A stretch of DNA of 64,000 bases from IMGVR_UViG_3300034072_000758:124001-188000, one strand, 5' to 3'. Positions 3,001 to 27,321 are shown, counted from the first letter of the stretch. The notes: generated by a model from the sequence alone, not told the origin. Translations and numbers: made by a program.

Positions 3001-5422
3001 TGTTCAGACGAATATTATACAGAACCTTCTCAACCCATGTTGCTGGTGGGTCGATTTCTGAAAGAGTTCCGTTTTCCAAGAAAGTTAAGATCGTTTGATT
3101 AAACTTGTTTTTGAAATATGTGTATTCGTGCTCAACAAAATTTATAGCTGCCACAACATCGAAACGAGAGTCACTGGCTACAAGCATAGTCTTCAACAGA
3201 GGGTTTCTGTGTTGAATGATGTAGTCACCATATCCGAAATACTTTTCAGTATCGCGGTAGTTGTTGATGCTATATGCGCTTCCGGCGAAGTTCGACTGTC
3301 CGGTCATGATCGAATTGAAATGATCGAACCACTTGTTTTTGTCGATAAATTCAACTTCTTCGTTATTTGGGTTAGCTTGTAGGTTCAGGGGTGTTGAGTA
3401 AACGCCATTAGCAATCTTTGTCTGGGAACTGAAATCCGGGTTCAAAAACCAATTATTCGAAAACTCATTTGTATTCCAGATGCGGTGATAGTAATAACCA
3501 ACGATCTCTTCGTTCTCAGCATATGTCACGCGATCCGTCATCGAATAGACTTGGAAAATATGTTTGTCGTATTCATTTAATACGGTCGGGAAACCAAGAA
3601 CGGAATCAGCCACACCATTCCCAATCTCATATCCGAATAGTTTGTTCCCGGCGAACGAAGATGTTGGATAAGTTAGTTCATCATCCAACTTGTTTTTGTT
3701 CGAATCATAGAGTTGGAACAGTGGCGGCACACCCGAATTATAAGCTTGGGCCAAGACCCATTGTGTTCCGGTGAAGCGGTATTCGTTGTAGTGATGGAAG
3801 TCCGAATAAACTTGTGGAATAGCTACACCATTGGCGTCACGCACTCCATTTCCCGGTACGAGACGAACGATGTCACCCAATTGTGGAGCGCCTTCGGAAA
3901 TCAGTTCAATAACCGCTGCGTTACCCCCCGTAGGCAATTCGATTTCTTCGTTGGATACGACACGATAGATACGTTGGTTCAAACCAACTTCAACGGTCGA
4001 GTTGGACTGAACGACCAAAAGGCGATCATTCGGTTGAAGAACATATGAGTCGGTTGTGCCGGGATTGACCACGATACTACCAACATATTCACCATTTATT
4101 TCCCCGAAGAACTTACCATTGATGTGTGACAGAGTAACTTGTTCTTCGTCCCATACGTTGTTGTCATATGGGTACAAATCCCAATGGTCAATAACATCGA
4201 GATCATCCGTGAGCATGATTGCTTGAACGTCTGGTAGACGATTTGTACCATAATCATAGAGTTCTATATTCGGAAGGAACTCGATAATAGGACGCACGGC
4301 TTTCTTGGCATTTAGATCAAGGTCGGACCACTTCAAAGAATTTTGGTGTATCCATAGGTTTTTGAGAGACCAAGCATTGCGATCCAGAGAGCGTCTGTCG
4401 TTCAAAACATAAACGGGTGTCTCTGAACCAGCATCTTGTGTGTGATCATCTGTAAAAACAATCGATGTCCCAACTCCGTCAACGATGAACACCTTACCCA
4501 AGGATACCCCATCATTCAGACGAAGGCGCATACCCGAAGTGATCTCAACTTGGTCGATTTCTTTCCAGTATTCGGGGTTGAATGTATCGGTCGCTGTATG
4601 TTGTGTGATACAGAGATAATTGCGGGTTCCATAGTAAACGACTTCCCCAACGTTGTAGACGCGGCTTGAACGCACGTAGGACGCCCCAGAGAAGCCGTAA
4701 GAGTAGGCTTCCCAATATTGGAATGGGTGGAGTGCTTCGGCGGTCTTACCCTCGTATACGGCTTTTAAATCGCCATAACGGATGACTTCAATAATCGACC
4801 CAGCAGCCGGGGTAGCGATCTGTGCCTGACCGTTCACGATGTCGGCGGTGACTTCTTCACCGTTGACCAAAACGGACGGATGCTCGTCATCACCACCAAA
4901 GCCTAGAATGACCGATGGGAGTGTGAAGCGATTTTGAACGCCATCGCCGGTATAAACGTTTCTCGGCGCTTTCAAATTCAGCAGGGTCTTTTCATATTCG
5001 TCATCTGTCAAGCCACCCATCCAAATGTATTGGTTCGGGTTATTGATAGCATCCAGATTGATCGGCGGTGACCAAGAGTAATAATCCCCGGAAAAGAGGC
5101 GCGAATGATCTTCGACGTTTCCGCCCATGCTGTCGAGATAGTTGATCAGATCATCGTAGAACAGGGTATAGGCGACGTTACCATTCACCTTGCTGATCAT
5201 GGTTGGTTCGAGTTGATAATACTCGCGCTTGATGTCCTTCTCAGGAATGTAAAAGTCTTTTGTTGAGTCGAAATACGATGGCTTCTGTCCGATATAACCG
5301 GTCAAGGTTTCAGACGCACCACTTTGAAAGAGGTGATCGACCGTTGCGGAGAAGAAGTTCTTAAGAGTTTCGGTCTGATTGACAACCGGAAGGCTCTCAA
5401 CGAAAAAACGTTTCTTTGTCAT
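1..5422 (-). CDS. Giant virion structural protein (baseplate/tail-associated), >1800 aa, truncated by the left window edge
   Basis: Hand translation from ATG at 5422 gives MTKKRFFVESLPVVNQTETLKNFFSATVDHLFQSG...YYQLEPTM...RLFSGDYYSWSPPINLD. The frame is also open at the window edge and where spot-checked. No complete minus-strand ORF is in the track, consistent with run-off. Contains a CBM5/12-like motif near 1490-1603 (DWRASTNYAINTKISYNGKIYVALRSHLSSAVFESAFW). Preceded by TAAATA-N5-ATG. Confidence 0.85.
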   Translation of the reverse strand, partial: MTKKRFFVESLPVVNQTETLKNFFSATVDHLFQSGASETLTGYIGQKPSYFDSTKDFYIPEKDIKREYYQLEPTMISKVNGNVAYTLFYDDLINYLDSMGGNVEDHSRLFSGDYYSWSPPINLDAINNPNQYIWMGGLTDDEYEKTLLNLKAPRNVYTGDGVQNRFTLPSVILGFGGDDEHPSVLVNGEEVTADIVNGQAQIATPAAGSIIEVIRYGDLKAVYEGKTAEALHPFQYWEAYSYGFSGASYVRSSRVYNVGEVVYYGTRNYLCITQHTATDTFNPEYWKEIDQVEITSGMRLRLNDGVSLGKVFIVDGVGTSIVFTDDHTQDAGSETPVYVLNDRRSLDRNAWSLKNLWIHQNSLKWSDLDLNAKKAVRPIIEFLPNIELYDYGTNRLPDVQAIMLTDDLDVIDHWDLYPYDNNVWDEEQVTLSHINGKFFGEINGEYVGSIVVNPGTTDSYVLQPNDRLLVVQSNSTVEVGLNQRIYRVVSNEEIELPTGGNAAVIELISEGAPQLGDIVRLVPGNGVRDANGVAIPQVYSDFHHYNEYRFTGTQWVLAQAYNSGVPPLFQLYDSNKNKLDDELTYPTSSFAGNKLFGYEIGNGVADSVLGFPTVLNEYDKHIFQVYSMTDRVTYAENEEIVGYYYHRIWNTNEFSNNWFLNPDFSSQTKIANGVYSTPLNLQANPNNEEVEFIDKNKWFDHFNSIMTGQSNFAGSAYSINNYRDTEKYFGYGDYIIQHRNPLLKTMLVASDSRFDVVAAINFVEHEYTYFKNKFNQTILTFLENGTLSEIDPPATWVEKVLYNIRLNKTSDSPFSLSKMGGGQFYIPITPASIGVGITRKPDFFFDDTMGGIKFIIGHDGSRTPAFNDFRDDIILELEHQLYNAIEPALLTERPVFDITEHVYIGGEYSRDEYLNVMESSFYKWASENNLDYRDNNSFDPDDYFTWNMTNGGAFDGSQLAGNWRGIYLKYFDTTRPHSHPWEMLGFTDKPVWWDIEYGAAPYTRGNTKMWTDIEEGRIRQGQRAGLSARYARPNILNILPVSEEGALLDPVEARIVIVLPIMSDAASEWVYGDCSPVENLWRLSSAYAYAQAIASFLLKPAKFIEEGWDTINNRKIDNGQYINLTTGNRPKNSELYVHGEFLDRERVYACGIQQFIGEYIISLGADPAIFGNAVRGLNVMLGHKMGGFTSVSDMVTTTDNFGIIPSDDVNLVLYQSAPIKSDFYSGIIVTWNGSGWTMSGYDDSQPWFNIIPPMITSPRYKITTGTSEEITYNDWRASTNYAINTKISYNGKIYVALRSHLSSAVFESAFWDEVGTVTASDNVSVLVYSQGEDEVIKIPYGTTFYTPQEVTDFILGYERYLESRGWLFDEVENELVINWKLSVKEFLEWSSVEYEAGESIFFSPSTYKAKYKTDHGLVSSVMTSVNGKKNIVGYTGVSKTSEQVAVSRREDETVFQSTDGDIYGIRVKVREIEHAILFSNQTIFGNLIYNPLFNLRQPRIRILGKRSVDWTGRLDAPGYVIANNEIVPNFMKSTDDFLNMYDIEDHNNATFATQARHNIGYSKRDYLSNLAINEIQQFEFYQGMIQQKGSVGTFDKLLRSDYVDQNRELAFREEWAFKIDQYGGVARNKTASFLIQQSDMSSDSEIVHFSVGNTIGNDMIEIYDNTTVDTRWVERADDPLNVFQTRTTYAPRDTDLPVSGYVRTNEVNNIVFSYEDIQTLTHISAGDTVWVHSVDASRGLTPLDTQWYFVGVYNNSTTYWNTANLVLTTNSSYVVENMDNDIVFRSPSALAPFITTSTGLIPEAGKT

Positions 5423-5427
5423 AAGTG

Positions 5428-5433
5428 TATTTA
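5428..5433 (-). promoter_or_regulatory. T4-like late promoter box TAAATA, 5 nt before ATG 5422
   Basis: Minus strand reads TAAATA-CACTT-ATG. Confidence 0.75.
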
Positions 5434-5551
5434 AGGACTCTATAAAGTGCGTATATTATATTTATCCCCGTGAAAAACAGCATATTTAAAGTAAAAATTG
5501 ACCTCAATATTTTTATTATGCTATCGTCAATAGTAGATAAGGATTATACCG

Positions 5552-5758
5552 ATGGAATTAATTACTACAAATCTTCACATTATTGCCAGCGCAATATTGC
5601 TGTTGTTTTCGGCACTCAATGTTTTCTTTTATTATCGCAAGAAAACATCACTGAACCTTCAAGTTGCCGCATGGTTGTTCTTCGCAGCCATCATAGCATT
5701 CTATATTTTACAAGGGACGTTTACCTTCACCCTCTCGTTTGGAACAGGTGCCATCTAA
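5552..5758 (+). CDS. Small two-TM membrane protein
   Basis: 68 aa with two hydrophobic segments separated by YYRKK. Confidence 0.6.
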   Translation: MELITTNLHIIASAILLLFSALNVFFYYRKKTSLNLQVAAWLFFAAIIAFYILQGTFTFTLSFGTGAI

Positions 5759-5803
5759 AAATATAGATAAATATCTATAGATAAATTTTTCGGAGTGAAG
5801 GCT

Positions 5804-6148
5804 ATGACCGAAGAAGATAAAATCGTCTGGAATGAATTTGTTCAAAATATGAACAAATATGCTCCAACTGTTTCGTATTTCCCACCAGTTAAGCGCGCTT
5901 ATCGTTTGGACCTTCATGGTATGACGGTCGATAGCGCTCACAAGACTACTATCGACTTCATTGAAAAGTCTAAGGTGTCTGGTTTAAAGCATATCACGAT
6001 TGTGACCGGCCTCAGCGGAAACATCAAGAAAGAGTTTCCGTACTGGCTGGAACGCAATCCACATATTGCTAAGATCGAGCAAAAAAGCGGTGGTGGAGCC
6101 TACAAGCTTTATCTGAAAAAGAATCAGGCTAACAGCAGTAGAAGATAG
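5804..6148 (+). CDS. Smr/MutS2 C-terminal domain protein
   Basis: RLDLHGMTVDSAH...ITIVTG...GGGAY are Smr motifs; N-terminal EEDKIVW resembles alphaproteobacterial Smr proteins. Confidence 0.85.
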   Translation: MTEEDKIVWNEFVQNMNKYAPTVSYFPPVKRAYRLDLHGMTVDSAHKTTIDFIEKSKVSGLKHITIVTGLSGNIKKEFPYWLERNPHIAKIEQKSGGGAYKLYLKKNQANSSRR

Positions 6149-6462
6149 ATCGCATCTTCGGCTTGCTGTTTATGAAATAACCGATACCAACCTTGGATAA
6201 TATCGGCCCCTTCTCGGCGTCTATACTCAGGCCGAATGTGATATTTGAAATACAAAGTTTCACCTTCGACAGTAATAAGTATATCGCCGCTTTGATATGT
6301 TTCACTTCTGACTTTAAATGACATACCATTTATCTCAGTGTTCCATATACTTACGGACCCACTGTTATAAGACACGCTGTAAATAGGACACATCTTTTGG
6401 CTATTCAAAAAGATTGAATAGTGAGGGACGTTCCTTTCAACAATAGGCCGCTTAAGAAGCAT
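6124..6462 (-). CDS. Hypothetical protein with C-terminal acidic-hydrophobic motif
   Basis: Ends QQAEDAIYLLLLLA*. Confidence 0.65.
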   Translation of the reverse strand: MLLKRPIVERNVPHYSIFLNSQKMCPIYSVSYNSGSVSIWNTEINGMSFKVRSETYQSGDILITVEGETLYFKYHIRPEYRRREGADIIQGWYRLFHKQQAEDAIYLLLLLA

Positions 6463-6466
6463 AACC

Positions 6467-6931: not shown

Positions 6932-6973
6932 TGTTTATCCTTTGTGCTTTCGAAGCACCATACAACAAATGGC

Positions 6974-8222: not shown

Positions 8223-8232
8223 GCTGTCACAC

Positions 8233-8451: not shown

Positions 8452-8471
8452 CTTATTCCCTATGATAGTTG

Positions 8472-8545
8472 TGACCACGGCAGGATTCGAACCTGCGACC
8501 GTCCGCTTAGAAGGCGGATGCTCTATCCATCTGAGCTACGTAGCC
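8472..8545 (-). tRNA. tRNA-Arg (anticodon UCU)
   Basis: GGCTACG-TA-GCTC-AGATGGATA-GAGC-A-TCCGC-CTTCTAA-GCGGA-CGGTC-GCAGG-TTCGAAT-CCTGC-CGTGGTC-A folds as a cloverleaf; followed by CAA, so CCA is not encoded. Confidence 0.95.
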
Positions 8546-8553
8546 ATAAGGCA

Positions 8554-8879: not shown

Positions 8880-8881
8880 TC

Positions 8882-10006
8882 ATGACGAATACGGTTTTTG
8901 CATCGACATGGGTGCGCTCTAGGTCACCAATCGAATCCACACATTCTTTCATTACCCCCACGGATGAAGTTCTGGCGGTGGTGAAATACAATATGATCAA
9001 CGGTGTTATCGCGGTTATCGATGATGCCAATAATGGGTCATACAAAATCACTCTTCAATCCAAGCCCAAACATGATACGGAAAACAGCGCCCTGACCCGC
9101 GCTGACACTATGATCGGTGACGATAATCACGTACTCAAGAAGCTAATGGATGCTGCCTTCTCTGATGATGATTACGAAAAGTATGATCCGTATCAGGGAA
9201 AGCGTCGTAATACCGTGTCGATGCCATTTGGGATGATGATACCTCCGCAAATTCGCGCTCAAATAGCTTTGGTGGATGATCGCGCCAATACTATAATAGA
9301 GAAAATAAAAACCGGTATCCAAAATACCTATTTCCAAAAGCTGTACGATACCGGCCAGCGCGCAAATGTCGATGATCTAATCTCTGATCTCAAGCTCAGA
9401 AAATACAGCGGTCAGTTAACCTTGGAGCAATCCAAAGATTATTATAGCCGCACCAAGTATCAACTCGGTCGCGGGTTTTTGGAAGTGGCTACGCTCGATG
9501 AAACGCTTGCTGGTAGAGTCGTATACTATACACCCGAACTAATGGCCCACGAGAAGGTAATTCCCTTCGTCACGCGCAAGCAATATATTGAATTTCTTTC
9601 ACGGTACGATCAATCGCGCGACGGCGTATTGACGGAAAGCGCAAGCAAGTTGATTGAGAAATTCGGCCTGACTGACGCGGAAATGGGTGAATTGCTCCTT
9701 CATCGACCAGTCCTTCTTCCCATGATTATGAAGCTGATGCCCGTACCAGAAAGCATTTTGGTTGAAGTCTTCAAAGGTCATCCTTCGGTATTTCATAGCA
9801 TCGACGCCACGCTGGAACAGTTTCAGCTATTCGTGAGTGCCAACAGCGTCAATTACACACTCAAGGTACTCAAGGATTTCAAATCGGAATGGCTCGAATG
9901 GCTTAACACCGAACTTCAAAAACACCGGGGCAGTCTGTTATACGCAGCGGACGATCATGCCAAGGTCAAGAAGCTGATGAAATCACCCCTCACCCAGCAA
10001 GCGTAA
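8882..10006 (+). CDS. Hypothetical protein (helical-repeat C-terminal half)
   Basis: 374-aa ORF with no recognised catalytic motif. Confidence 0.7.
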   Translation: MTNTVFASTWVRSRSPIESTHSFITPTDEVLAVVKYNMINGVIAVIDDANNGSYKITLQSKPKHDTENSALTRADTMIGDDNHVLKKLMDAAFSDDDYEKYDPYQGKRRNTVSMPFGMMIPPQIRAQIALVDDRANTIIEKIKTGIQNTYFQKLYDTGQRANVDDLISDLKLRKYSGQLTLEQSKDYYSRTKYQLGRGFLEVATLDETLAGRVVYYTPELMAHEKVIPFVTRKQYIEFLSRYDQSRDGVLTESASKLIEKFGLTDAEMGELLLHRPVLLPMIMKLMPVPESILVEVFKGHPSVFHSIDATLEQFQLFVSANSVNYTLKVLKDFKSEWLEWLNTELQKHRGSLLYAADDHAKVKKLMKSPLTQQA

Positions 10007-10369
10007 ATCATTCTCACGATCCAAGAACTTCCATTCGACTTTCGATGGGTCAAAGAATTGGAGTTCTTGGATCACTTGCTCTACGTCCAGATCGGAGCAT
10101 GTATAAAGGTCAAGTTGAAGAATCGCCGGATCACATTCATCCCATGAATGAATTACGAAATGACTGGTCTCGATAATGGCATCGGCAGTCATTCCGCGAT
10201 TGCCTTCAACGGCGCAATAACGAGCGCGCGGCGCGGCCAATTCCTTCATTCCGATGTTCTTGATCAACGCGGACATCCACGCGCACACAGCGTCACAATC
10301 CTCAGCCAACGGCGGTCTTTTTATTTCGGCACGAACGATTAGATGCTTGTGGCGGTTGTCTGGTGTCAT
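9983..10369 (-). CDS. speD: S-adenosylmethionine decarboxylase proenzyme (pyruvoyl-dependent) family
   Basis: GMTADAIIETSHFVIHSWDE...LQLDLYTCS matches AdoMetDC motifs. Confidence 0.8.
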   Translation of the reverse strand: MTPDNRHKHLIVRAEIKRPPLAEDCDAVCAWMSALIKNIGMKELAAPRARYCAVEGNRGMTADAIIETSHFVIHSWDECDPAILQLDLYTCSDLDVEQVIQELQFFDPSKVEWKFLDRENDLRLLGEG

Positions 10370-10429
10370 CGAAATATTCCCCTGAAATAAGTGTAGGAAT
10401 ATTTATAATAAAACCGTCCTTATGAAAAA

Positions 10430-12569: not shown

Positions 12570-12672
12570 AACGCACCTTTTTTACACTTTGTTAACTATC
12601 CCTATCAAAGTGAATTTCGCTCGTCAACCATTTTTGTTCACCATACTAAATACTTTTAAGCGAGGGTAGGAA

Positions 12673-13140
12673 ATGCGTTATGATGATTTCAACTCCTACG
12701 ATATAATAAAATTATTGTTGGAAGACGATGATGAAAATCTTCCGAGAATAGTTAAGTGTTTTGTGTTACTTCTTTCAATATATTCCGATCCTTTCGAAGC
12801 ACGTTCTATTAAAAATATTCAAAAATATATTGATACCAACAATCTTTATATTATTTGGGATGAAATGCCAAACGCCCCCAATATTCGTATTGAAAATCTA
12901 ATCTACGGTATAGCAACAAAGAACCCGGCATACTTTCATTATTGCTATGGTTTTGTAGTAGGTATGATTGTAGCCGATGATGCTTGCTCCACAGTCTATC
13001 AATTTCTAAAGCCATCTAAGGCTATTGAATCCGATCCAACTAGATGCGCATGTTTTAGAAACATATTAGACATGGAGTTCGGCAAAGCCTTCTTGGACCA
13101 CCATTACAAAATTATTGACGAAACTTTAGATACAGTGTAA
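12673..13140 (+). CDS. Hypothetical protein
   Basis: 155 aa; GAGG/AGGA SD. Confidence 0.6.
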   Translation: MRYDDFNSYDIIKLLLEDDDENLPRIVKCFVLLLSIYSDPFEARSIKNIQKYIDTNNLYIIWDEMPNAPNIRIENLIYGIATKNPAYFHYCYGFVVGMIVADDACSTVYQFLKPSKAIESDPTRCACFRNILDMEFGKAFLDHHYKIIDETLDTV

Positions 13141-14814: not shown

Positions 14815-15024
14815 ATGCTTACATTCATACCAACAACCGACATAGATATAGGCCGCGCCGACCTACTGATTGGCGAATTTCCGGTGGATGAAAACGGAAA
14901 TCCTCAAGCTGTCAAAGTGGGTGACGTTCTAAACGTTAATGGCGTATCCCGCCACGTGATCGGAATAGAAGACCCACGCTTCCATTCGAAAGGAACCTGT
15001 GGGCTGGTATTCGGTAAACTTTAA
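14815..15024 (+). CDS. Hypothetical protein
   Basis: 69 aa, directly after the upstream stop. Confidence 0.55.
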   Translation: MLTFIPTTDIDIGRADLLIGEFPVDENGNPQAVKVGDVLNVNGVSRHVIGIEDPRFHSKGTCGLVFGKL

Positions 15025-15527
15025 GACTGGAAGAACAGGCCAGTGTCGCCAGCTAAGAACTTTGACAGCGGCACAAACACATAGCTGCCGTATCTGACCG
15101 AAGCATTACCATTCACTAGAGGGTCGTCGTGGCTAATCACGGCGACCTCTTCTACATTATTGAACTTCATAATAACCAGAACGCGCTTACCACAAGCCGT
15201 AGCGTCTTGCTCGGCCTGTGAGAGCCAATCATTCAGTTGCTTGTAGTCTTGCTTCATGATTGACGCGAATGAAGGCGGCGTCTTGTAGTGCTTACATTCG
15301 ATGCTGTAGGCAAACGTGTCCGGGGTTATGATGTCACCAAATGTTGCCTTGGATAGGTCGTGCGTCTCTGTACGCGCCTTGTTGGTGCCTCCGAAGAACG
15401 AACCGCTATCACTCGCTCGCCTAAAACCTTTGGTTATACCAAGATGTTCAGCGAAACGATCTGAGAAGAGATTCGAGATTTTGCGTTCGAAGGTATTCCC
15501 CTTCGCTTTTGAATTTATACCGGCCAT
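15021..15527 (-). CDS. Holliday junction resolvase-like PD-(D/E)xK nuclease
   Basis: NSKAKGNTFER...GDII...IECKHYK. Confidence 0.8.
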   Translation of the reverse strand: MAGINSKAKGNTFERKISNLFSDRFAEHLGITKGFRRASDSGSFFGGTNKARTETHDLSKATFGDIITPDTFAYSIECKHYKTPPSFASIMKQDYKQLNDWLSQAEQDATACGKRVLVIMKFNNVEEVAVISHDDPLVNGNASVRYGSYVFVPLSKFLAGDTGLFFQS

Positions 15528-15532
15528 GATAG

Positions 15533-15538
15533 TATTTA
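15533..15538 (-). promoter_or_regulatory. Late promoter TAAATA box
   Basis: TAAATA-CTATC-ATG(15527). Confidence 0.75.
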
Positions 15539-15550
15539 TTAAGGCCGGTG

Positions 15551-16000: not shown

Positions 16001-16031
16001 GTCTCATTATTACACAATAGTTAATATGAAA

Positions 16032-16037
16032 TAAATA
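16032..16037 (+). promoter_or_regulatory. Late promoter TAAATA box
   Basis: TAAATA-TTAAA-ATG(16043). Confidence 0.7.
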
Positions 16038-16042
16038 TTAAA

Positions 16043-16676
16043 ATGCGTTACTCAGAACTTTTCGCTTCATGAAGAAGAACCCGATCTGTTCTATAAGCTT
16101 CCGGCGAATGTTCAAGAAGAAATGAAAGAAGACGTACTCAACAAGATCATGAGTGATGATCCGGCTGATGCTCCGACAACCGCCCACATGAGCTTCAACA
16201 AACAAATGAAGCGCAACACATGGCTTGTTCACTTTTCAGACAACGCGAGACAAATCTGGTATGAAGGTTTCAAGTACGGTGTAGACCGTATGGACAAGCT
16301 CGGCCTGACAACCTATCTGAATAATAAAGAGAAGGAAGAGGGTGGCTACAATTTCGCATTCGAGGCCAATTCGCGCTATGCGTCGAATGCTGCCCGTAAC
16401 CATAAGTACGGACGTGATGCCGTGATCTTCCAGAGTGCTGGCATCAATTGTGAGCACTATGGCGATGAAGAAGATCAAGTCGTATTCTGGGGCGAAGACG
16501 TTGATTGGCACAGCATCATCTACATTCGTTACGAAGATGGCGACTGGTGCCTGATTTCCCGACGCGATCTGAGGAACGGTAATGACGTATTGCTTCGTTC
16601 AGAGAACTTCGAATCTATTGTCAAGTGGGTAGCGAAGAACCATCAGCAATATCGCAAATACCTTTACGGTAAGTGA
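16043..16676 (+). CDS. Probable ADP-ribosyltransferase-fold internal virion protein, split by a +1 frameshift near its 5' end
   Basis: ATG 16043 gives MRYSELFAS*; the +1 frame is open (SLHEEEPDLFYKLP...) into track ORF 16122-16676, which has WLVHFSDNARQIWYEGF...YNFAF...GDEEDQVVF. Confidence 0.55.
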
Positions 16677-16922: not shown

Positions 16923-17152
16923 CGACCTTTACCCCAATCCTCGATAAAATATTCCCAATTTTCTTTGCCATTACGGAGATCGGCGTAATCGATGTAGGCG
17001 TGAGGGTTTTGTCCCGCAGCTATACACGCGGCCTTGGCTTCGGCCTCAGTGCGAATAATTGGCTTCCGGTGCGCCCGGTCGAGCTTCATGGGACGCACGG
17101 TCACACCGCGCAATGATTGTTTTGGCTTGAGCTTGAGCTTGTTCATACCCAA
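16919..17152 (-). CDS. Hypothetical basic protein
   Basis: 77 aa; ATGA-coupled to the next gene. Confidence 0.55.
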   Translation of the reverse strand: MGMNKLKLKPKQSLRGVTVRPMKLDRAHRKPIIRTEAEAKAACIAAGQNPHAYIDYADLRNGKENWEYFIEDWGKGR

Positions 17153-17182
17153 TGGATATGTCGAATATACTTTACTGTCAAC

Positions 17183-17188
17183 TAAATA
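17183..17188 (+). promoter_or_regulatory. Late promoter TAAATA box
   Basis: TAAATA-TCTTC-ATG(17194). Confidence 0.75.
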
Positions 17189-17193
17189 TCTTC

Positions 17194-17619
17194 ATGTCTC
17201 ACTGGTATAGAACAATCATCGAAAATATGGAAGAGGCCGTCATTAAATTGCGCGGTTTTGGCTCTGCCTCAAACACGGAAGAGTTTATGGAAGATTGGGA
17301 AAACATTACGGAAGAACATCCGTGGACGCCGAACATGCGTGTTTTCAACGATGCCGTGATGGTCAAGCTCGTCAAGTGGGGTGGAGCAATCCACATCGAA
17401 GATATTCAGTCACACGAGGGTAATCCAAAGGGAGAAGGCTCCAAGGCCCTACAAGCCATTTGTGACCTCGCTGACAAGCATCATGTGACTTTGGACCTTA
17501 CGGCTCAGGGAGACCGTGGAACGCCCACAGAGGCCCTTGTGAAGTGGTATACGCGCTTTGGTTTCACCATCACAGCCGACGATGAACGTGGTCCTGACAT
17601 GGAGCGCAAGCCGCGTTAA
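17194..17619 (+). CDS. GNAT-family acetyltransferase-like protein
   Basis: KGEGSKALQAICDLAD...LDLTA...LVKWYTRFGF; start reassigned by the late box. Confidence 0.72.
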   Translation: MSHWYRTIIENMEEAVIKLRGFGSASNTEEFMEDWENITEEHPWTPNMRVFNDAVMVKLVKWGGAIHIEDIQSHEGNPKGEGSKALQAICDLADKHHVTLDLTAQGDRGTPTEALVKWYTRFGFTITADDERGPDMERKPR

Positions 17620-18550: not shown

Positions 18551-19441
18551 TTACACTACCCAGATTTCACCCTTAGCGCTATTCAATATTTTGTTGAATT
18601 TACTACCCATGAGTCTTGGGAAATTAGCCCAAGCCTTTTGAGCATGAGCGAGCTTCTTTTCATCTGTGGTCAACTTTTCATCGGGGTGAATTTCGGGAGG
18701 CAATTCTTTTAACGTGATCTTACCCTTGATCATCCATTGCGTGAAGGTTTCAACATACCATTCGTATGGTGTCGCCAACCTGTTATTTCGAGCACTCGCC
18801 ATTGTCCCCAGATGTGGTCCCAAAATTTTTTGGTATATCTCCTGCCACTCATCACGTTGCATTGTACCAAAATAGCTATAATCTCTTTTGGACGGCCATA
18901 TGGTCCCGTAAGCATAAGAAGTAATCTTCTCTACGAAATTCTCAAAGTAATGAGCCGCATCAAATATCGCCTCATGTTCGTGAGACTTTGCGGTTAGAAA
19001 GCAATGTCCCAGACGATGCGCAATCATCCACGGACTGCGTAAGTTTATCTTGTCAATGTCCGAGAGATTGTTCGTAAAGATAACCGTAATAACATCCGGC
19101 GTATGATTTGCCGCGATCCGCCCCCAAACCTTCTCGCCCATCATGTCCTTGATCCATTCTTCTTTGACTGGACCGATGTTCATAGTCGGATCGTAATTTG
19201 GATTGGTGCTTTGCCAGAAGTACATGTCGAATGTGGTTGGTACTTTCAGAAATGCCGACTTCACCCGCTGGATGGTCGGCTCATGAGTTATGGCGCGTTT
19301 GTCACTGTCGGACCAATGCTTTCGCTCTTGGCGGTATGTCCCACTAAATTTGCTTATCATCTGGTCTTCATTGTCACGAAGATCAGGATCAACATTCCAG
19401 TTTCGGATTGGCATTTCGGAAATTATTTCGTGATAGCGCAT
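18551..19441 (-). CDS. Probable internal head protein with zincin-like HxxxH motif
   Basis: N-terminus MRYHEIISE resembles the T4 capsid-targeting sequence; PWMIAHRLGH...EWYVE. Confidence 0.6.
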   Translation of the reverse strand: MRYHEIISEMPIRNWNVDPDLRDNEDQMISKFSGTYRQERKHWSDSDKRAITHEPTIQRVKSAFLKVPTTFDMYFWQSTNPNYDPTMNIGPVKEEWIKDMMGEKVWGRIAANHTPDVITVIFTNNLSDIDKINLRSPWMIAHRLGHCFLTAKSHEHEAIFDAAHYFENFVEKITSYAYGTIWPSKRDYSYFGTMQRDEWQEIYQKILGPHLGTMASARNNRLATPYEWYVETFTQWMIKGKITLKELPPEIHPDEKLTTDEKKLAHAQKAWANFPRLMGSKFNKILNSAKGEIWVV

Positions 19442-19446
19442 GAAGA

Positions 19447-19452
19447 TATTTA
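19447..19452 (-). promoter_or_regulatory. Late promoter TAAATA box
   Basis: TAAATA-TCTTC-ATG(19441). Confidence 0.75.
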
Positions 19453-19467
19453 GGACGTATCATGCCC

Positions 19468-21351: not shown

Positions 21352-23689
21352 TTGTTGTTCCCTCTTCCGACGAACCCTTCTTCTTCAATACCGGGGCAAT
21401 CAATTCCAGTTTAATAGCAGTCAATGTTTGCTTGAACTCACCTTTGTCGAAACGGCTGACCACATTCGTAACTCGATATACACCCAAGAACACATCGTCT
21501 GGTCGGATGATTAGGTTACCGTCATCGCCAACTTTTAATGGGAACCGGAAATTGAAAGCAAAGGTGTTATCGCCTTCGGCAAAGTTCGGCAAATTGCGAG
21601 CGCGGACACCCTCTGCGTTTAGAAGAACACGACGCTCTATAGATGAATATCCCAACCAGTATGGATCGCCCTTAATATCCATCGTGATATTGATCATAGC
21701 ATTTGTGAGCGGGGCATATTGCTGGTTATAGAGAGCGCCTACCAGAGACGCCCCACGATGCCATTGTGCGGCATATCCAGAGCCAGCCGCATAGTCTTCC
21801 CCAGCGCGCTGATTATAGGTCGCAATGTATGGTAACGCGAATGGCTTGTCGAAATCCTCGGCATACGATTCCAAAGGCAGCACATCCTTCATACGATCCA
21901 TCTGGATTTGATTTTCCAGATTTGTATCAGTTCTAATCTGGTTGGCGTTAAAACGAAGGTCCGTTCTCTGTTGTTCAAGATTTGCGATACGACCTTGAAT
22001 TTCAGTCTTTTTGGCTTCGTCAGTCGTCGCTTCCATTTCGCTAGTAAGATTGCTTATCTCGCCGTTAATACCTGAAAGCTTTTTACGAATTTCAGACGGT
22101 GAAAGTTCAACATTTTTCTTCTGATCGGAATAGGTGCCTGAGTTGATAGCGCTACTTGGATTATGCTTCTCGTGATCAGTCACGGCAGCATTTTTTGTAC
22201 GCCATCCACCAAGTTGAGGAAGCAATGATGAAAAGGCAAAGTTGAACTCAGTGTCGAGATTAATCACTTCGGTATTCATACCAGTGAAGCGATACTCATA
22301 CTTCTTCTTGAGATAATTATTATCCAATAATGTTTGAACCATATCCGTGGTTACTTGTTCATCAGACGTGTTTTCATATTGCGAAGGCGCAAGGTTAGCA
22401 CCCAATGTTCTAAAGCCCCAAATATGATAGGTTACCTCTTTCATATAGTTACCGGTGATCGGATCGTAACCTGTTATCTTGATCTCAGGCTCAATGACGG
22501 GTACGACCGCCAGACGATATTTCTTACCCTTATAGAGACCGCCTTCATCCTCGATGTCCAGTGGAGTAGAAGTATCCAGCATAAGCATCTGCATCGACTC
22601 GCAATGCGCATACATTGCTGTGATGATGTCCGTTAAAGTCGCACCTCTTGGAATTTCAGCGGAAATGTATTGATTCGACGTTCCCTGAGAAAATGGGATA
22701 TTGCGAATAGGACTGTGCTCCGGGTTCGTGAGATCAGGACTTAGAACAAAGTTATTCGGGTCATATTCCTTATCAGATGTTACGATGCTTCGCGCCTTGA
22801 TTTTAAATTTGTAAATTTCCCCAGCATACATTTCATCCCATGCTCTTGTGAGCTTGGCCGCTAGATCATCAAGGAATGTTTTTACGGTATTTCCACCGAT
22901 ATTCAATTTTTCAGGAATACGCCCACATGTTTCATCATTGAAACCCTCCATGTCATAAGGCATACATGTCAGAATATGACGCGCACCAGCTACGTCGATG
23001 TTGGTCTTGATATTACTAATCGAGATTTGATAAATCCATCGCCCGCCATTATCCAAATCCATCTTCTCGCATGGATTGTAATTGACATCCCCGTTTTCAT
23101 TGTAGCCAATAAAGGTGAGTTCGAGGAAGTACCAGAACTTCATATAATTCTGAACGTTCAAGTCCTGCGCCGAAATGATCATCGATTCCAGCAATGACGA
23201 TCCCACAGGTTCGGTGATGACGATCTCGAAGCTAGATGAATACGAACTTCTCGTTCGCCATCCCGGCGCGGTCATTTGGTTGATCTCAACACTCTCGATA
23301 TTGATACCCGCTGTTACGCCCGTCTCAGCAATAGTGATTTTGGGAATGGCGTCGATGATCTTGTAAATCTCTTGCGTGTCATAGCTTGTCACACGATCCA
23401 TGATGTCGCGTTCGGTTGTCATGAACAATCGGAAACGATAGTTCGACATCGGCATTTCGGATAGAACGTTTGGAAGGAAATTGCTTTCATCTTCCAAGAG
23501 CCTTGAGATTGCATTGTTTTGCGCAAGCTGTTTCTTCTGAGCGCGCTGGAACGCCGCCTCGTTTTCGGCTTTCTTATCCGCCTCAGCCTTCTTCTCTTCC
23601 GCTGTCTGAGGGGCCTCAGCAACAGACATAGTTGTGTTAGCAGTCTGGTTCGGAACGTAAGGTCTGTTTGGATTATTTGTAATAGCCAT
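21341..23689 (-). CDS. Baseplate hub-like structural protein (gp27-like)
   Basis: IKGDPYWLG and FLGVYRVTNVVSRFDKGEFKQTL; lies between the gp53-like and gp5-like genes. Confidence 0.7.
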   Translation of the reverse strand: MAITNNPNRPYVPNQTANTTMSVAEAPQTAEEKKAEADKKAENEAAFQRAQKKQLAQNNAISRLLEDESNFLPNVLSEMPMSNYRFRLFMTTERDIMDRVTSYDTQEIYKIIDAIPKITIAETGVTAGINIESVEINQMTAPGWRTRSSYSSSFEIVITEPVGSSLLESMIISAQDLNVQNYMKFWYFLELTFIGYNENGDVNYNPCEKMDLDNGGRWIYQISISNIKTNIDVAGARHILTCMPYDMEGFNDETCGRIPEKLNIGGNTVKTFLDDLAAKLTRAWDEMYAGEIYKFKIKARSIVTSDKEYDPNNFVLSPDLTNPEHSPIRNIPFSQGTSNQYISAEIPRGATLTDIITAMYAHCESMQMLMLDTSTPLDIEDEGGLYKGKKYRLAVVPVIEPEIKITGYDPITGNYMKEVTYHIWGFRTLGANLAPSQYENTSDEQVTTDMVQTLLDNNYLKKKYEYRFTGMNTEVINLDTEFNFAFSSLLPQLGGWRTKNAAVTDHEKHNPSSAINSGTYSDQKKNVELSPSEIRKKLSGINGEISNLTSEMEATTDEAKKTEIQGRIANLEQQRTDLRFNANQIRTDTNLENQIQMDRMKDVLPLESYAEDFDKPFALPYIATYNQRAGEDYAAGSGYAAQWHRGASLVGALYNQQYAPLTNAMINITMDIKGDPYWLGYSSIERRVLLNAEGVRARNLPNFAEGDNTFAFNFRFPLKVGDDGNLIIRPDDVFLGVYRVTNVVSRFDKGEFKQTLTAIKLELIAPVLKKKGSSEEGTTSGT

Positions 23690-23694
23690 ACCTG

Positions 23695-23700
23695 TATTTA
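23695..23700 (-). promoter_or_regulatory. Late promoter TAAATA box
   Basis: TAAATA-CAGGT-ATG(23689). Confidence 0.75.
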
Positions 23701-23727
23701 TGGCTTATTAAAACCGTATTTTATTAA

Positions 23728-24033
23728 TCAGAGGCTCAGAGCTTGCTTTAGTGTAGCAAATGTTGGAACCATGATTACTGTACCAGTCGTCATATCCCAA
23801 ACCGGGTCTTTGAGGATGTTTCTGTTTCTCACAGAAAAAATCCACCAATATTCTGGCGAACCGTAAAGGTCCAGCGACAATTTGTCGGGGCGATTTTCAT
23901 AGAGCTTAGTGATGGTGAACTCGGTATCGTCGGTCGATTCTGGGATAGGGCGGTGAACATAGTTCTTGATGTACCAAGACGCTTGTGGCGTGGAAACATA
24001 AGGCGACGATGCTGTATAATTAACCTTGCTCAT
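23728..24033 (-). CDS. Baseplate wedge protein, T4 gp53/LysM-like
   Basis: YENRPDKLSLDLYGSPEYWWIFSVRN; start reassigned to ATG 24033. Confidence 0.8.
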   Translation of the reverse strand: MSKVNYTASSPYVSTPQASWYIKNYVHRPIPESTDDTEFTITKLYENRPDKLSLDLYGSPEYWWIFSVRNRNILKDPVWDMTTGTVIMVPTFATLKQALSL

Positions 24034-24038
24034 ACGTA

Positions 24039-24044
24039 TATTTA
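24039..24044 (-). promoter_or_regulatory. Late promoter TAAATA box
   Basis: TATAAATA-TACGT-ATG(24033). Confidence 0.75.
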
Positions 24045-24080
24045 TATTGAAAAAATTAACTACAATTCGTATCATCCCAT

Positions 24081-24728: not shown

Positions 24729-24783
24729 CAATTTATGGACAATATGTAAATATTGTCTATGTGTCAATATAGGAGACGGTATC

Positions 24784-25149
24784 ATGGAACTTCAAAACTA
24801 CCCTGCTGTCCAAAGTTGGACACGCAAGGTCTACATCTTCACCGGCAATCTTATCATCGCCACCGGCACGGTTCATGGTGGTGTGGATTGTTTCGTCAAC
24901 ATCGATCCCGATGACGGGTTGTTCCGCCATCTGATCAAGGACGATGTGGATCACATCAAGGCCCTGCGCAGACTGAATACCGGCCTTCGTTTCGACAAGT
25001 ACGGCGGGAAGTTCGTCAATACGTGGGAAGACTACATTCCATCCCCGGCCATGCTCGAACTTCAAATCGTCTGTAAGACATCGTTCGATGTCGGCATCGC
25101 GGGTGATCGCTACGCCAGCTTGACTGGTGACGATTCGTTCGCCGCTTAA
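24784..25149 (+). CDS. Hypothetical protein
   Basis: AGGAG SD; TTGACA at 24725. Confidence 0.65.
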   Translation: MELQNYPAVQSWTRKVYIFTGNLIIATGTVHGGVDCFVNIDPDDGLFRHLIKDDVDHIKALRRLNTGLRFDKYGGKFVNTWEDYIPSPAMLELQIVCKTSFDVGIAGDRYASLTGDDSFAA

Positions 25150-26084
25150 TCCAGCGAAAAGAAACTGGCTGGTAGTGGCTTAACCAGAACGAGGTTTGCC
25201 GGTAGACCATGTGAACTATTCAGTTCATCATCAACCGTCTTGCCTACACCATCTTCCGGGTCAACGCGAAGATACTCTTTTGGGATGTTGGTGAGCTTCA
25301 CTATCGTCCCATTATCTTTTTCGTCAGCATACCACTGAGCATTGTCTGGGGTATTGGTGACATAAAGATAGCGGCGCTGCCCCATTTGACCGCCCTGCGC
25401 CCACTTATTCGGCTCCCAACCATTCTTGAGTAAGCTATCAGCCGACTCTCTCGAAGTACCGTGATAGAGTGCCGGGATCACATCAGCATTTTCGTCTAGG
25501 TTGATTTTGAGGTCGTATTCGTCGGTCGGGACATCTTTCCATTTGATGATTTCGACCTTCTTGATTTTCTTTGGGTTGACGAGAACCACCATCGTATTAC
25601 GCCCCCCACCGTAATTATTCGACACGGTATAATCCACACCTTGCTCGACTAGCCATCGGCGGAAATCGGCTGTCTTCGATGGCTTAAGTAAATCATAATT
25701 CAAAATGAGATTGGTGAATTGTTCGGCAGTGATGCCTTCTCCGTTCTTTCTCTGTACCGAAATCTTATACGATTCCCAGAATGCTTCTTGTGTTCTCTTG
25801 TCTCTAGGAAGATTGCGCTTGCCCCATTCTAAGCAAACCTCGTTTGATAGCACAACCTGATCGGCGCGATTACCTTTCTCGAAAGTGACGCGGTACATCT
25901 TGTTGCCGCCCTTGGCAAATTTGGCTGCGATCTCGATGTCAGAGATCAGATACAAACCGACGCCATGAACGATTTGTCCACTCTTGTTTCCTAAGATTTC
26001 GTTGTAATCGGATTCGAGATTACGCCCACCATGATACATGGTGATCAAGTTAGAACTCTCAGTCAGAAACTCGTTTAATAGCAT
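25146..26084 (-). CDS. Tandem two-domain ADP-ribosyltransferase-fold protein, probable internal virion protein
   Basis: Domain 1 MYHGG...HGVGLYLISD...KFA; domain 2 LYHGTSRESADSLLKNGW...LYVTNTPDNAQWYA; N-terminus MLLNEFLTE. Confidence 0.65.
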   Translation of the reverse strand: MLLNEFLTESSNLITMYHGGRNLESDYNEILGNKSGQIVHGVGLYLISDIEIAAKFAKGGNKMYRVTFEKGNRADQVVLSNEVCLEWGKRNLPRDKRTQEAFWESYKISVQRKNGEGITAEQFTNLILNYDLLKPSKTADFRRWLVEQGVDYTVSNNYGGGRNTMVVLVNPKKIKKVEIIKWKDVPTDEYDLKINLDENADVIPALYHGTSRESADSLLKNGWEPNKWAQGGQMGQRRYLYVTNTPDNAQWYADEKDNGTIVKLTNIPKEYLRVDPEDGVGKTVDDELNSSHGLPANLVLVKPLPASFFSLD

Positions 26085-26087
26085 ACA

Positions 26088-26501
26088 TTATTTAGGTTTT
26101 TTGTTATTCACAGACAGATATGACAATTCTATTGTGACTTTAGTGCGTTCCCACCCACTATTATCGCCTCGTTTATCTATTTCAGATAATTCAATTTTTT
26201 CTATCAAGCATCCAAGAACATTCAATTCAGAAACAACAGTTCTATTCTTCTGTTCCTTATATTCAATCGTTATATGTAATGGTTGCTGATCATGTTTGAG
26301 CGGTGTTAAACGACTCATAAATGTATCGAGAACCAAGCTTTCAGCATCATCGAAAAACGCTAATACTATATTTTCCCATTGAAGTCGCCCACTAACATAT
26401 TTGGCTTTAGGCGGCTTACAATATTCAATCATAGCATTCACTTGTTCAGGAACGTCATGTACAATAACATTGAAGTTAGTAGTAGATTTGATCATGAGCA
26501 A
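26088..26501 (-). CDS. Tail-tube (T4 gp19)-like protein, divergent
   Basis: YVSGRLQWENIVLAFFDD...LGCLIEKIELSEID...KVTIELSY pattern. Confidence 0.5.
   Translation of the reverse strand: MLMIKSTTNFNVIVHDVPEQVNAMIEYCKPPKAKYVSGRLQWENIVLAFFDDAESLVLDTFMSRLTPLKHDQQPLHITIEYKEQKNRTVVSELNVLGCLIEKIELSEIDKRGDNSGWERTKVTIELSYLSVNNKKPK
26089..26094 (-). promoter_or_regulatory. Late promoter TAAATA box (4-nt spacer)
   Basis: TAAATA-ATGT-ATG(26084). Confidence 0.65.
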
Positions 26502-26533
26502 AGTTTAACACAATACTCAAGCTCGACCAATTT

Positions 26534-27310
26534 TTAAATCCAACCCTTGTTCTTACGCATCAATTCGCCAGTTCTAAACTTATCAAGTGAGAACTCGGTG
26601 CGTTGAAGTGTTGGTGTTTGCTGTATGACCACTTTTATATTCACAGTGAATTTCGCAGGAACATACATGGTGATACCAGCGGACTCACATAGAACCATGT
26701 TGATCTGATCATCGAACGACCATCCGTGCGATTGGACGATGACTGGAAGCTCGTTGAACATACCATTACCGTAGCCTTCGAGAAGAAGCACGGGTGGTGG
26801 AAGACCGGCCAGCTTATTAGCCTTGTCTTGCTCACCAAAATACATTTTGGATACGGTTCTCAAGAAGTGTAGCACAGCAATAGCATACGCGCCTTCTCTC
26901 TGGTTCTGAACCGTGAAGGTTGCGTTGATGTCAATCGAGGCATTCGGTGTTCCGGTATAATGCGAATATCCATAGTTGGTATGGACCAATGCGGCCTCAG
27001 AATAATTAACGCCCTGACTGAACGTGATGACCGGGGTATATGGGAATAGCAATCCATTGGTCCCATCGGTCATATCTGGATGCATGATCGAGAGCACATT
27101 ATCCTGCGCCACTTTCCCGTAAATCTGATCTGCTTGACCATCCTTGGCACGAAGACGCAAACGAATATCCGTATTCGTTGTAGCCACCGGGCTAGAGACA
27201 ACACCAAAACTTTCATCATCCGCAGCCGATGAAATATCAACGATGGTGTTGGACGAATTAACTGCCAACGCCGCGCCAGCAAAGGATGCGAGAGGATTAT
27301 AATAGACCAT
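26534..27310 (-). CDS. Baseplate/tail-tube initiator-like structural protein
   Basis: LLFPYTPVI...HFLRTVSKMYFG...PPPVLLLEGYGNGMFNELPVIV. Confidence 0.65.
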   Translation of the reverse strand: MVYYNPLASFAGAALAVNSSNTIVDISSAADDESFGVVSSPVATTNTDIRLRLRAKDGQADQIYGKVAQDNVLSIMHPDMTDGTNGLLFPYTPVITFSQGVNYSEAALVHTNYGYSHYTGTPNASIDINATFTVQNQREGAYAIAVLHFLRTVSKMYFGEQDKANKLAGLPPPVLLLEGYGNGMFNELPVIVQSHGWSFDDQINMVLCESAGITMYVPAKFTVNIKVVIQQTPTLQRTEFSLDKFRTGELMRKNKGWI

Positions 27311-27315
27311 ATTTT

Positions 27316-27321
27316 TATTTA
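27316..27321 (-). promoter_or_regulatory. Late promoter TAAATA box
   Basis: TATAAATA-AAAAT-ATG(27310). Confidence 0.75.

What the first reader, a model, noticed from the sequence alone, without database searches (positions are those of the whole stretch)
5422..27321. Late genes look leaderless: TAAATA sits exactly 5 nt before the start codon
Seen: TAAATA-N5-ATG precedes eight genes (starts 5422, 15527, 16043, 17194, 19441, 23689, 24033, 27310) and TAAATA-N4-ATG precedes one (26084). The spacers (CACTT, CTATC, TTAAA, TCTTC, TCTTC, CAGGT, TACGT, AAAAT) contain no SD. Established: T4 gp55-dependent late promoters are TATAAATA boxes with the start site a few nt downstream. Inference: transcription starts at or next to the A of AUG, so the late programme uses leaderless mRNA, while many early genes have GGAG-type SDs. 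The phage could then switch translation from SD-led host and early mRNA to its own late mRNA. The rule also corrects several start calls.
Basis: partly seen in the sequence, partly recalled or inferred. Interest (0 to 1): 0.72.

Follow-up and report, generated by a model that had tools for sequence, protein, structure and literature searches.

The report
Late promoters fused to start codons
In this 517-kb uncultured phage, about half of the T4-type late promoter boxes sit exactly 5 bases before an ATG, so those late genes are most likely made from mRNAs with no leader; many uncultured relatives do the same, and no RNA data test it yet.

Summary
TAAATA-N5-ATG occurs 9 times in the window (0.78 expected). 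In the whole 516,805-bp phage genome it occurs 56 times, against about 5 per neighbouring spacing. Only ATG follows the box, and 50 of 56 sites open long ORFs.

The box, (A/C)TAAATA with no -35 element, matches the T4 gp55-type late promoter, and the phage encodes a gp55-family sigma factor. In T4 the box spans -13 to -6, so N5 puts +1 on the A of ATG. Four results support this:
- Position -1 is a pyrimidine in 54 of 60 genes.
- Box-to-start distances are 4-6 nt or at least 18 nt, never 7-17.
- Some divergent gene pairs have only 21-28 nt between their ATGs.
- The first 36 nt of these genes fold more weakly.

About 50 further boxes have 13-50-nt leaders with Shine-Dalgarno sites, among them the tail sheath and major capsid operons. 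Downstream cistrons also use Shine-Dalgarno sites, so a global switch away from such translation is unlikely.

Cultured relatives (PA5oct, Atu_ph07, Phosso, a Rak2-like phage, T4) lack the geometry. Of 80 uncultured IMG/VR relatives, 74 have it. No transcription start site was mapped. I rate it a new variant of known kinds.

The parts
5420..5434 (-). TTAAATA box, 5-nt spacer CACTT, then ATG (A at 5422). It opens a 2423-aa virion structural protein that runs off the window's left edge (G000 122151-129422). A second ATAAATA box lies at 5459-5465, 36 nt upstream.
   Evidence: (phrog_10938, E=0)
15525..15539 (-). ATAAATA-N5-ATG for gene 15021-15527 (168 aa, RusA-like/PDDEXK endonuclease).
16031..16072 (+). 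ATAAATA-N5-ATG opening only a 9-codon ORF (MRYSELFAS*). The +1 frame is open from 16044 to 16676, so this looks like a frame break in a gene with a capsid-targeting-type N-terminus. Alternatively it is a short leaderless upstream ORF before the ORF at 16122-16676.
17182..17196 (+). CTAAATA-N5-ATG for gene 17194-17619 (141 aa, N-terminus MSHWYRTIIENMEE). The longest-ORF start at 17152 is probably wrong.
19439..19453 (-). CTAAATA-N5-ATG for gene 18551-19441 (296 aa, N-terminus MRYHEIISE).
23687..23701 (-). ATAAATA-N5-ATG for gene 21341-23689 (782-aa virion structural protein). The baseplate hub/lysozyme gene 19468-21351 follows in the same direction.
   Evidence: (phrog_11190, phrog_13211)
24031..24045 (-). 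ATAAATA-N5-ATG for gene 23728-24033 (101-aa baseplate wedge subunit). The longest-ORF start at 24075 is probably wrong.
   Evidence: (phrog_7145)
26082..26095 (-). CTAAATA-N4-ATG for gene 25146-26084 (312 aa, weak ART-PolyVal match, N-terminus MLLNEFLTES).
27308..27322 (-). ATAAATA-N5-ATG for gene 26534-27310 (258-aa virion structural protein).
   Evidence: phrog_12050
38455..38469 (+). TTAAATA-N5-ATG opening a 19-codon ORF inside ORF 38064-38843. Probably a chance match and not part of the system.
5767..5806 (+). Leadered late promoter: ATAAATA box, 30 nt containing GGAG, then the ATG of gene 5804-6148.
10367..10406 (-). Leadered late promoter: (T)ATAAATA box, 30 nt containing AGGGGA, then the ATG of gene 9983-10369.
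12646..12675 (+). Leadered late promoter: CTAAATA box, 20 nt containing GAGGG, then the ATG of gene 12673-13140 (N-terminus MRYDD).

Best explanation
(A/C)TAAATA is the late promoter of this phage. It is read by host RNA polymerase carrying the phage's gp55-family sigma factor, and it needs no -35 element.

At about 58-70 genes the box lies 5 nt (sometimes 4) before the ATG. Transcription would then begin at the A of the start codon, and the first cistron would be translated from a leaderless mRNA by direct 5'-AUG recognition. At about 50 other genes the same box lies 18-57 nt upstream and a normal Shine-Dalgarno leader is kept.

The leaderless class holds terminase, baseplate and fibre proteins, very large virion proteins, and many proteins with capsid-targeting-type N-termini. 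The bulk virion proteins I checked, sheath and major capsid, use Shine-Dalgarno sites. My inference is that the two geometries set expression level and compactness within the late class. I do not think they switch the cell's translation mode.

Shown: the motif statistics, the sigma gene, the gene classes and the distance bimodality. Inferred: the start-site position, the leaderless translation and the stoichiometry rationale.
For: - Enrichment and spacing.
- ATG only at N5.
- gp55-family sigma: phrog_12791 E=6e-76 and phrog_234 E=7e-18; 38% identity to the PA5oct late sigma and 29% over 72 aa to T4 gp55.
- T4 box spans -13 to -6 (PMC2988020), so N5 places +1 at A.
- Position -1 is C or T in 54/60 motif genes against 186/308 Shine-Dalgarno genes, Fisher p=3e-6. 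This fits the pyrimidine(-1)/purine(+1) preference of bacterial RNA polymerase.
- No -35 conservation.
- Box-to-start distances are 4 (12 sites), 5 (45), 6 (1), none at 7-17, then about 50 at 18-57 with Shine-Dalgarno sites.
- ATAAATA is 78% intergenic in a genome that is 12.7% intergenic.
- 34 of 60 motif genes sit at divergent junctions.
- Four divergent pairs have only 21-28 nt between ATGs, filled by two back-to-back boxes.
- sigma70-type hexamers and one-base variants of the box show no fixed spacing to ATG.
- The first 36 nt are less structured (p=0.002).
- Late functions of the motif genes.
- Cultured relatives carry the same box 20-45 nt upstream with Shine-Dalgarno sites.
- 80 IMG/VR relatives have 182 N5 sites against about 14 background, with 171 long ORFs and -1 a pyrimidine in 170/182. 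TerL itself is at N4-N6 in 43/80.
Against: - No transcription start site was mapped for this phage or any relative with the geometry. The start site is extrapolated from T4, whose sigma is only distantly related.
- Homologues of the T4 sliding-clamp activator were not detected with Pfam models, and gp33 was not searched for.
- In 8 genes the TAA of the box is the stop codon of the upstream gene. Read-through transcripts and translational coupling could contribute there.
- The host is unknown, so its capacity for leaderless translation is unknown.
- Gene starts come from my own heuristic gene caller.
Confidence: 0.75

Rival explanations
1. The box is the late promoter, but initiation is offset by 1-4 nt within the spacer. 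The mRNAs would then carry a very short leader rather than none.
For: N4 (16) and N6 (9) sites exist beside N5 (56). In IMG/VR relatives N6-N8 are mildly raised (41, 26, 35 against about 14). Start-site choice by bacterial RNA polymerase can vary by about 1 nt (established knowledge).
Against: The spacing peaks sharply at N5. The pyrimidine(-1)/A(+1) signature falls exactly at the ATG. A leader under 6 nt cannot hold a Shine-Dalgarno site, so translation would work as for a leaderless mRNA anyway.
Confidence: 0.12
2. The box works at the RNA level as an A/U-rich translation or re-initiation signal at a fixed distance from AUG. The transcripts would start further upstream.
For: In 8 same-strand cases the box's TAA is the upstream gene's stop codon, 7-8 nt before the ATG. 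That is a geometry compatible with termination-reinitiation.
Against: 34 of 60 motif genes have no same-strand upstream gene. In pairs 21-28 nt apart, any upstream promoter would lie inside the opposing gene. The same box occurs 18-57 nt upstream of starts with a true Shine-Dalgarno site, both here and in relatives. The box matches the gp55 promoter consensus, and the sigma is encoded.
Confidence: 0.07
3. Late infection switches the cell from Shine-Dalgarno-led to leaderless translation, favouring late phage mRNAs.
For: Many late first cistrons have the leaderless geometry. The phage encodes a ribosomal protein bS21 homologue (E=5e-18) in an operon behind a late box. bS21 acts in initiation (established knowledge).
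Against: The tail sheath, the major capsid operon, the long tail fibre, the endolysin and bS21 itself are Shine-Dalgarno-led late genes. Downstream cistrons of leaderless-headed operons carry Shine-Dalgarno sites. No IF3 homologue was found.
Confidence: 0.1
4. The pattern is a chance or compositional artefact, or copies of one repeated element.
For: None beyond the AT-rich nature of the hexamer.
Against: 0 of 100 shuffles reach the observed count. The excess is about 11-fold at one spacing only. The flanks are not conserved. The proteins are mostly unrelated. The pattern recurs in 74 of 80 related loci.
Confidence: 0.01

Closest known systems
T4 gp55/gp33/gp45-dependent late promoters (TATAAATA at -13 to -6)
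   Same: A near-identical box with no -35 element. It precedes head, tail and baseplate genes on either strand. A gp55-family sigma is encoded.
   Different: T4 shows no TAAATA-N5-ATG excess (10 against 5 control). Here about half of the boxes abut the ATG. The first T of the octamer is not conserved (-13 is A or T; -12 is A in 35 and C in 10 of 47). gp45-type clamp not detected and gp33 not searched for.
Predicted ATAAATA late promoters of Rak2-like and related jumbo phages (CBB, GAP32; also seen in PA5oct, Atu_ph07, Phosso, fENko-Kae01)
   Same: The same box before structural genes (PMC5259590). These are the closest cultured relatives by virion proteins, sigma and TerL.
   Different: In those genomes the box lies about 20-45 nt upstream with a Shine-Dalgarno site, and N5 is not enriched.
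Leaderless middle/late transcripts of Thermus phages YS40 and Lalka27a
   Same: Phage late transcripts whose 5' end is the initiator codon, driven by a phage-specific -10-like element (bioRxiv 10.64898/2026.04.20.719267).
   Different: A different promoter consensus (TAGGGT there), a different phage lineage, and hosts in which leaderless mRNAs are common. Those cases were mapped experimentally; this one was not.
-10 motif adjacent to ORFs in Deinococcus-Thermus
   Same: A -10 element a few bp before the start codon serves as a complete promoter for leaderless genes (PMC12340547).
   Different: That is a cellular sigma-A promoter. Here sigma70-type hexamers show no such spacing; only the late box does.
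Poxvirus late promoter TAAATG (my own knowledge, not tested here)
   Same: A late-promoter core fused to the start codon.
   Different: An unrelated polymerase and a eukaryotic virus, and those transcripts gain a poly(A) leader by slippage. This is an analogy only.

Membership tests
T4-type (gp55-dependent) late promoter | The phage encodes a gp55-family late sigma factor. | tested here: met
   G000 307850-308638(-): phrog_12791 E=6e-76 and phrog_234 E=7e-18. BLASTP against T4 gp55 gives E=2e-6 over residues 40-110. 38% identity to the PA5oct late sigma.
T4-type (gp55-dependent) late promoter | A TATAAATA-like box about 10 bp upstream of the start site, with no -35 element. | tested here: met
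   The logo shows (A/C)TAAATA and no information upstream of -13. The first T of the T4 octamer is not conserved.
T4-type (gp55-dependent) late promoter | It precedes late (virion, packaging, lysis) genes. | tested here: met
   TerL, baseplate hub and wedge, fibres, virion proteins, sheath, major capsid operon, endolysin.
T4-type (gp55-dependent) late promoter | A sliding clamp (gp45) acts as activator. | tested here: inconclusive
   T4 gp45, PF02916 and PF09116 found nothing in the genome. A divergent clamp could be missed.
T4-type (gp55-dependent) late promoter | A gp33 co-activator is present. | not tested
   No search was run. gp33 is short and poorly conserved.
Leaderless mRNA | The transcript 5' end coincides with the start codon. 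| not testable with these tools
   No run listed in the first search ('any') was an RNA run.
Leaderless mRNA | A -10-type element lies at start-site distance from the start codon, with no room for a Shine-Dalgarno site. | tested here: met
   N5 (56 sites) and N4 (16 sites); none at 7-17 nt.
Leaderless mRNA | The start codon is AUG, because a 5'-terminal AUG is what the ribosome recognises. | tested here: met
   56 ATG against 1 GTG and 3 TTG at N5. About 17% of Shine-Dalgarno-led genes are called with GTG or TTG.

The most novel reading that the evidence does not exclude
A large, mostly uncultured branch of PA5oct/Atu_ph07-like jumbo phages has rebuilt late expression around leaderless mRNAs from gp55-type promoters. 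The phage-encoded bS21, expressed from a late operon, would retune host ribosomes so that leaderless and Shine-Dalgarno-led late messages are both favoured over host mRNA. That would be a translational takeover layer added to the T4 late-transcription scheme.
Probability: 0.12. Interest if true: 0.85.

Novelty: new variant of a known kind. Interest (0 to 1): 0.62.

Why it matters
- gp55-type late promoters and leaderless phage mRNAs are each known. I found no report of the two fused at a fixed 5-nt spacing.
- The geometry appears in 74 of 80 uncultured relatives but in none of the cultured models. Current model phages may therefore misrepresent how this jumbo-phage group expresses late genes.
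- The rule gives a single-base start-codon predictor. It changed 20 of 61 longest-ORF starts here. It also marks late genes in metagenomic phage genomes without expression data.
- One genome offers about 58-70 leaderless and about 50 Shine-Dalgarno-led late genes behind the same promoter box. That is a natural system for asking what leaderless initiation buys a phage.

Tried and rejected
- Megablast of 10 kb against cultured phages found no match.
- A single-protein search of IMG/VR with the 782-aa virion protein found nothing. The TerL alignment worked instead.
They are near-identical strains at low coverage and cover none of the promoters, so they say nothing about conservation.
- I considered ATGCGTTA after the ATG as a nucleic-acid 'downstream box'. 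I rejected it because it reflects conserved N-terminal peptides (MRYFEILNE and similar) on otherwise unrelated proteins.
- sigma70-like hexamers and one-base variants of the box show no fixed spacing to ATG. The leaderless geometry is therefore specific to the late box.
- IF3 and a gp45 clamp were not found.
- The bS21 homologue search returned only one relative, so it gave no clue to the host.
- The TerL tree shows no clean single origin for the trait, and I make no claim about direction.
Full report
**Where the window lies.** The window is G000:C1:124001-188000 of a 516,805-bp IMG/VR virus record with direct terminal repeats, estimated complete, GC 45%. DNA runs place it in subsurface and soil metagenomes. 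It has no near relative among cultured phages at the DNA level. Its virion proteins, TerL and late sigma are distantly related to Agrobacterium phage Atu_ph07, Sinorhizobium phage Phosso, Pseudomonas phage PA5oct and Rak2-like phages.

**The observation.** TAAATA-N5-ATG occurs 9 times in the window against 0.78 expected, and no shuffle reached 9. Genome-wide the count is 56 at N5 and 16 at N4, against about 5 at other spacings. At N5 only ATG is enriched: 56 ATG, 1 GTG, 3 TTG. Of the 56 N5 sites, 50 open ORFs of at least 65 codons. The logo is (A/C)TAAATA, with -12 being A in 35 and C in 10 of 47 sites. There is no information upstream of -13, no G at -5, and a pyrimidine at -1.

**What the box is.** The genome encodes a gp55-family late sigma factor. 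It matches phrog_12791 at E=6e-76 and phrog_234 at E=7e-18. It is 38% identical to the annotated late sigma of PA5oct, and it aligns with T4 gp55 residues 40-110. T4 late promoters are an 8-bp TATAAATA box without a -35 element, whose first T is at -13 (PMC2988020). An ATAAATA late motif has been predicted for the related jumbo phages CBB and GAP32 (PMC5259590). ATAAATA is 78% intergenic here, in a genome that is 12.7% intergenic. Genes behind the box include:
- terminase large subunit
- baseplate hub/lysozyme neighbourhood and baseplate wedge
- tail fibres and collar fibre
- virion proteins of 2423 and 1773 aa
- tail sheath and endolysin
- the operon holding the gp23-like major capsid protein

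**Why N5 implies leaderless mRNA.** With the box at -13 to -6, five spacer bases put +1 on the A of ATG. Several independent features fit this.
- Position -1 is C or T in 54 of 60 motif genes, against 186 of 308 Shine-Dalgarno-led genes (Fisher p=3e-6). This is the known pyrimidine(-1)/purine(+1) preference of bacterial RNA polymerase.
- Start-codon use is ATG only, as 5'-AUG recognition requires (the Brock et al. 2008 reference cited).
- Box-to-start distances are bimodal: 4 (12 sites), 5 (45), 6 (1), none from 7 to 17, then about 50 between 18 and 57. The ATAAATA subset of that second class (27 sites) mostly carries GGAG, AGGA or GAGG in the leader. This is what one expects if a leader must either hold a Shine-Dalgarno site or be absent.
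- 34 of 60 motif genes sit at divergent junctions and none overlaps an upstream gene.
- Four divergent pairs have only 21-28 nt between their ATGs. That space is filled by two back-to-back boxes, for example CAT-N5-TATTTATAAATA-N5-ATG at G000 262878/262901.
- The first 36 nt of motif genes fold less stably (median -1.55 against -2.6 kcal/mol, p=0.002).
- sigma70-type hexamers and one-base variants of the box show no preferred distance to ATG. The geometry therefore belongs to the late box alone.

**What is not supported.** The late programme is not uniformly leaderless. Late boxes with Shine-Dalgarno leaders head the tail sheath gene, the two-gene operon with the major capsid protein, a long-tail-fibre gene, a 3755-aa virion protein, the endolysin, and an operon containing a bS21 homologue. 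Genes downstream of leaderless first cistrons frequently carry Shine-Dalgarno sites. A general switch away from Shine-Dalgarno-led translation would therefore damage the phage's own bulk protein synthesis. I infer that the two geometries tune expression and save space within the late class. The bulk proteins I checked, sheath and major capsid, keep a Shine-Dalgarno site. Terminase, baseplate proteins and internal proteins go leaderless. This rationale is inference and was not tested.

**Comparative picture.** The whole genomes of Atu_ph07, PA5oct, Phosso, fENko-Kae01, T4, Syn9 and S-PM2 show no N5 excess over the control. In the four jumbo relatives among these, the same box sits 20-45 nt upstream of late genes with a Shine-Dalgarno site. 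Pelagibacter phage HTVC008M shows a mild excess of 14 against 4.

TerL has thousands of metagenomic homologues, many on contigs of 0.3-0.6 Mb. Three contigs at 57-61% TerL identity are mostly leadered, although L051 has three genes at N4 or N5.

The 80 IMG/VR loci found with a TerL profile (45-49% identity, 1.08 Mb) look different:
- TAAATA-N5-ATG occurs 182 times against about 14 background, in 74 of the 80 loci.
- 171 of the 182 sites open long ORFs.
- Position -1 is a pyrimidine in 170 of 182.
- TerL itself is preceded by the box at N4-N6 in 43 loci.

On a TerL tree the geometry appears on both sides of the midpoint root. PA5oct is nested among N5-rich rows, and our phage groups with Phosso, L049, L050 and L051. 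The trait labels rest on short loci, and I draw no conclusion about gains or losses.

**Known precedents.** Most transcripts of Thermus phages YS40 and Lalka27a are leaderless. A -10 motif adjacent to ORFs drives leaderless genes in Deinococcus-Thermus. Full-text searches found no report of gp55-type late promoters fused to start codons. I therefore class this as a new variant of known kinds.

**Limits.** No transcription start site has been mapped. The one RNA run that holds part of a late gene (X6) was found after the single read-laying run had been used on DNA runs, which proved uninformative. Gene calls and start choices come from my own heuristic caller. The host is unknown. gp45 was not detected and gp33 was not searched for.

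**Side findings.**
- At least 22 late proteins share N-termini such as MRYFEILNE and MSNWYRNLVNLIE. These resemble the T4 internal-protein capsid-targeting sequence MKTYQEFIAEA, which I read directly from the T4 record. This explains the recurrent ATGCGTTA after the start codon.
- Window 16043 opens such an N-terminus but hits a stop after 9 codons, while the +1 frame stays open to 16676.
- The genome carries 57 tRNA genes, including a tRNA with anticodon CUA. TAG is the stop codon in 1 of 60 leaderless-geometry genes against 79 of 672 others (p=0.015).
- In 8 genes the TAA of the box is the stop codon of the preceding gene.

Noticed in passing
window 17194-17619(+), 18551-19441(-), 25146-26084(-), 12673-13140(+); genome-wide at least 22 genes: Otherwise unrelated late proteins share N-terminal peptides of two types, MRY(F/H)E(I/L)L(N/T)E and M(S/T)(N/H)WYRN(L/I)(V/I)NL(I/M)E. 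Both types end in L/I-x-E. They resemble the T4 internal-protein capsid-targeting sequence MKTYQEFIAEA, so this is probably a large set of head-packaged, ejected proteins.
   Followed up: partly
window 16043-16676: The ATAAATA-N5-ATG here opens MRYSELFAS* (9 codons), while the +1 frame is open from 16044 through 16676. The two frames overlap between 16044 and 16072. This could be an assembly indel, a pseudogene, or a short leaderless upstream ORF.
   Followed up: partly
G000:C1:501011-501244 (-), outside the window: A ribosomal protein bS21 homologue (PF01165, E=5e-18, 77 aa) with a GGAG Shine-Dalgarno site. It lies in a minus-strand operon headed by a leadered ATAAATA late box at about 503956. 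Only one database relative was found.
   Followed up: partly
G000:C1:117291-117364 (+); stop codons genome-wide: One of the 57 tRNA genes has anticodon CUA, which reads UAG. TAG is the stop codon in 1 of 60 leaderless-geometry late genes against 79 of 672 other genes (Fisher p=0.015). This hints at amber suppression late in infection.
   Followed up: partly
window 8471-8545 (-): A tRNA-Arg(TCT) gene lies in the window. Most other tRNA genes are clustered at G000 345-352 kb, 424-441 kb and 477-479 kb.
   Followed up: no
G000 100709+, 247421-, 291549+, 498951-, 513514+ (gap 8); 223528-, 447487+, 514400+ (gap 7): The TAA inside the TAAATA box is the stop codon of the preceding same-strand gene. 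The promoter, the stop and the next start are packed into 14-15 nt.
   Followed up: partly
G000 10707/10734, 99985/100014, 225596/225618, 262878/262901: Divergent late gene pairs have only 21-28 nt between their two ATGs. The gap consists of two back-to-back boxes; TATTTATAAATA is palindromic. The two promoters cannot be occupied at the same time.
   Followed up: partly
Pelagibacter phage HTVC008M (NC_020484), whole record: A mild excess of TAAATA-N5-ATG (14 against 4 control), mostly with a GTA-type spacer (TAAATAGTAnnATG). A cultured phage may share the geometry.
   Followed up: no
window 25146-26084 (-): A 312-aa late protein has a weak ART-PolyVal (ADP-ribosyltransferase) match, E=7e-5 and below the Pfam cut-off, plus a capsid-targeting-like N-terminus. 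It recalls the packaged T4 Alt enzyme; that comparison is from my own knowledge.
   Followed up: no
TerL homologues P0011, P0016, P0036-P0039, P0041, P0045 and others: Many relatives have TerL proteins of about 860 aa carrying PF14528, presumably an inserted intein or homing-endonuclease domain. Atu_ph07 TerL also matches in two pieces.
   Followed up: no
runs X3/X4 (2025) and X6 (2024 wastewater metatranscriptome): A 98-99% identical strain is present at low depth in two 2025 runs labelled with an organism name. An RNA run holds 8% of the words of the 782-aa late gene.
   Followed up: partly
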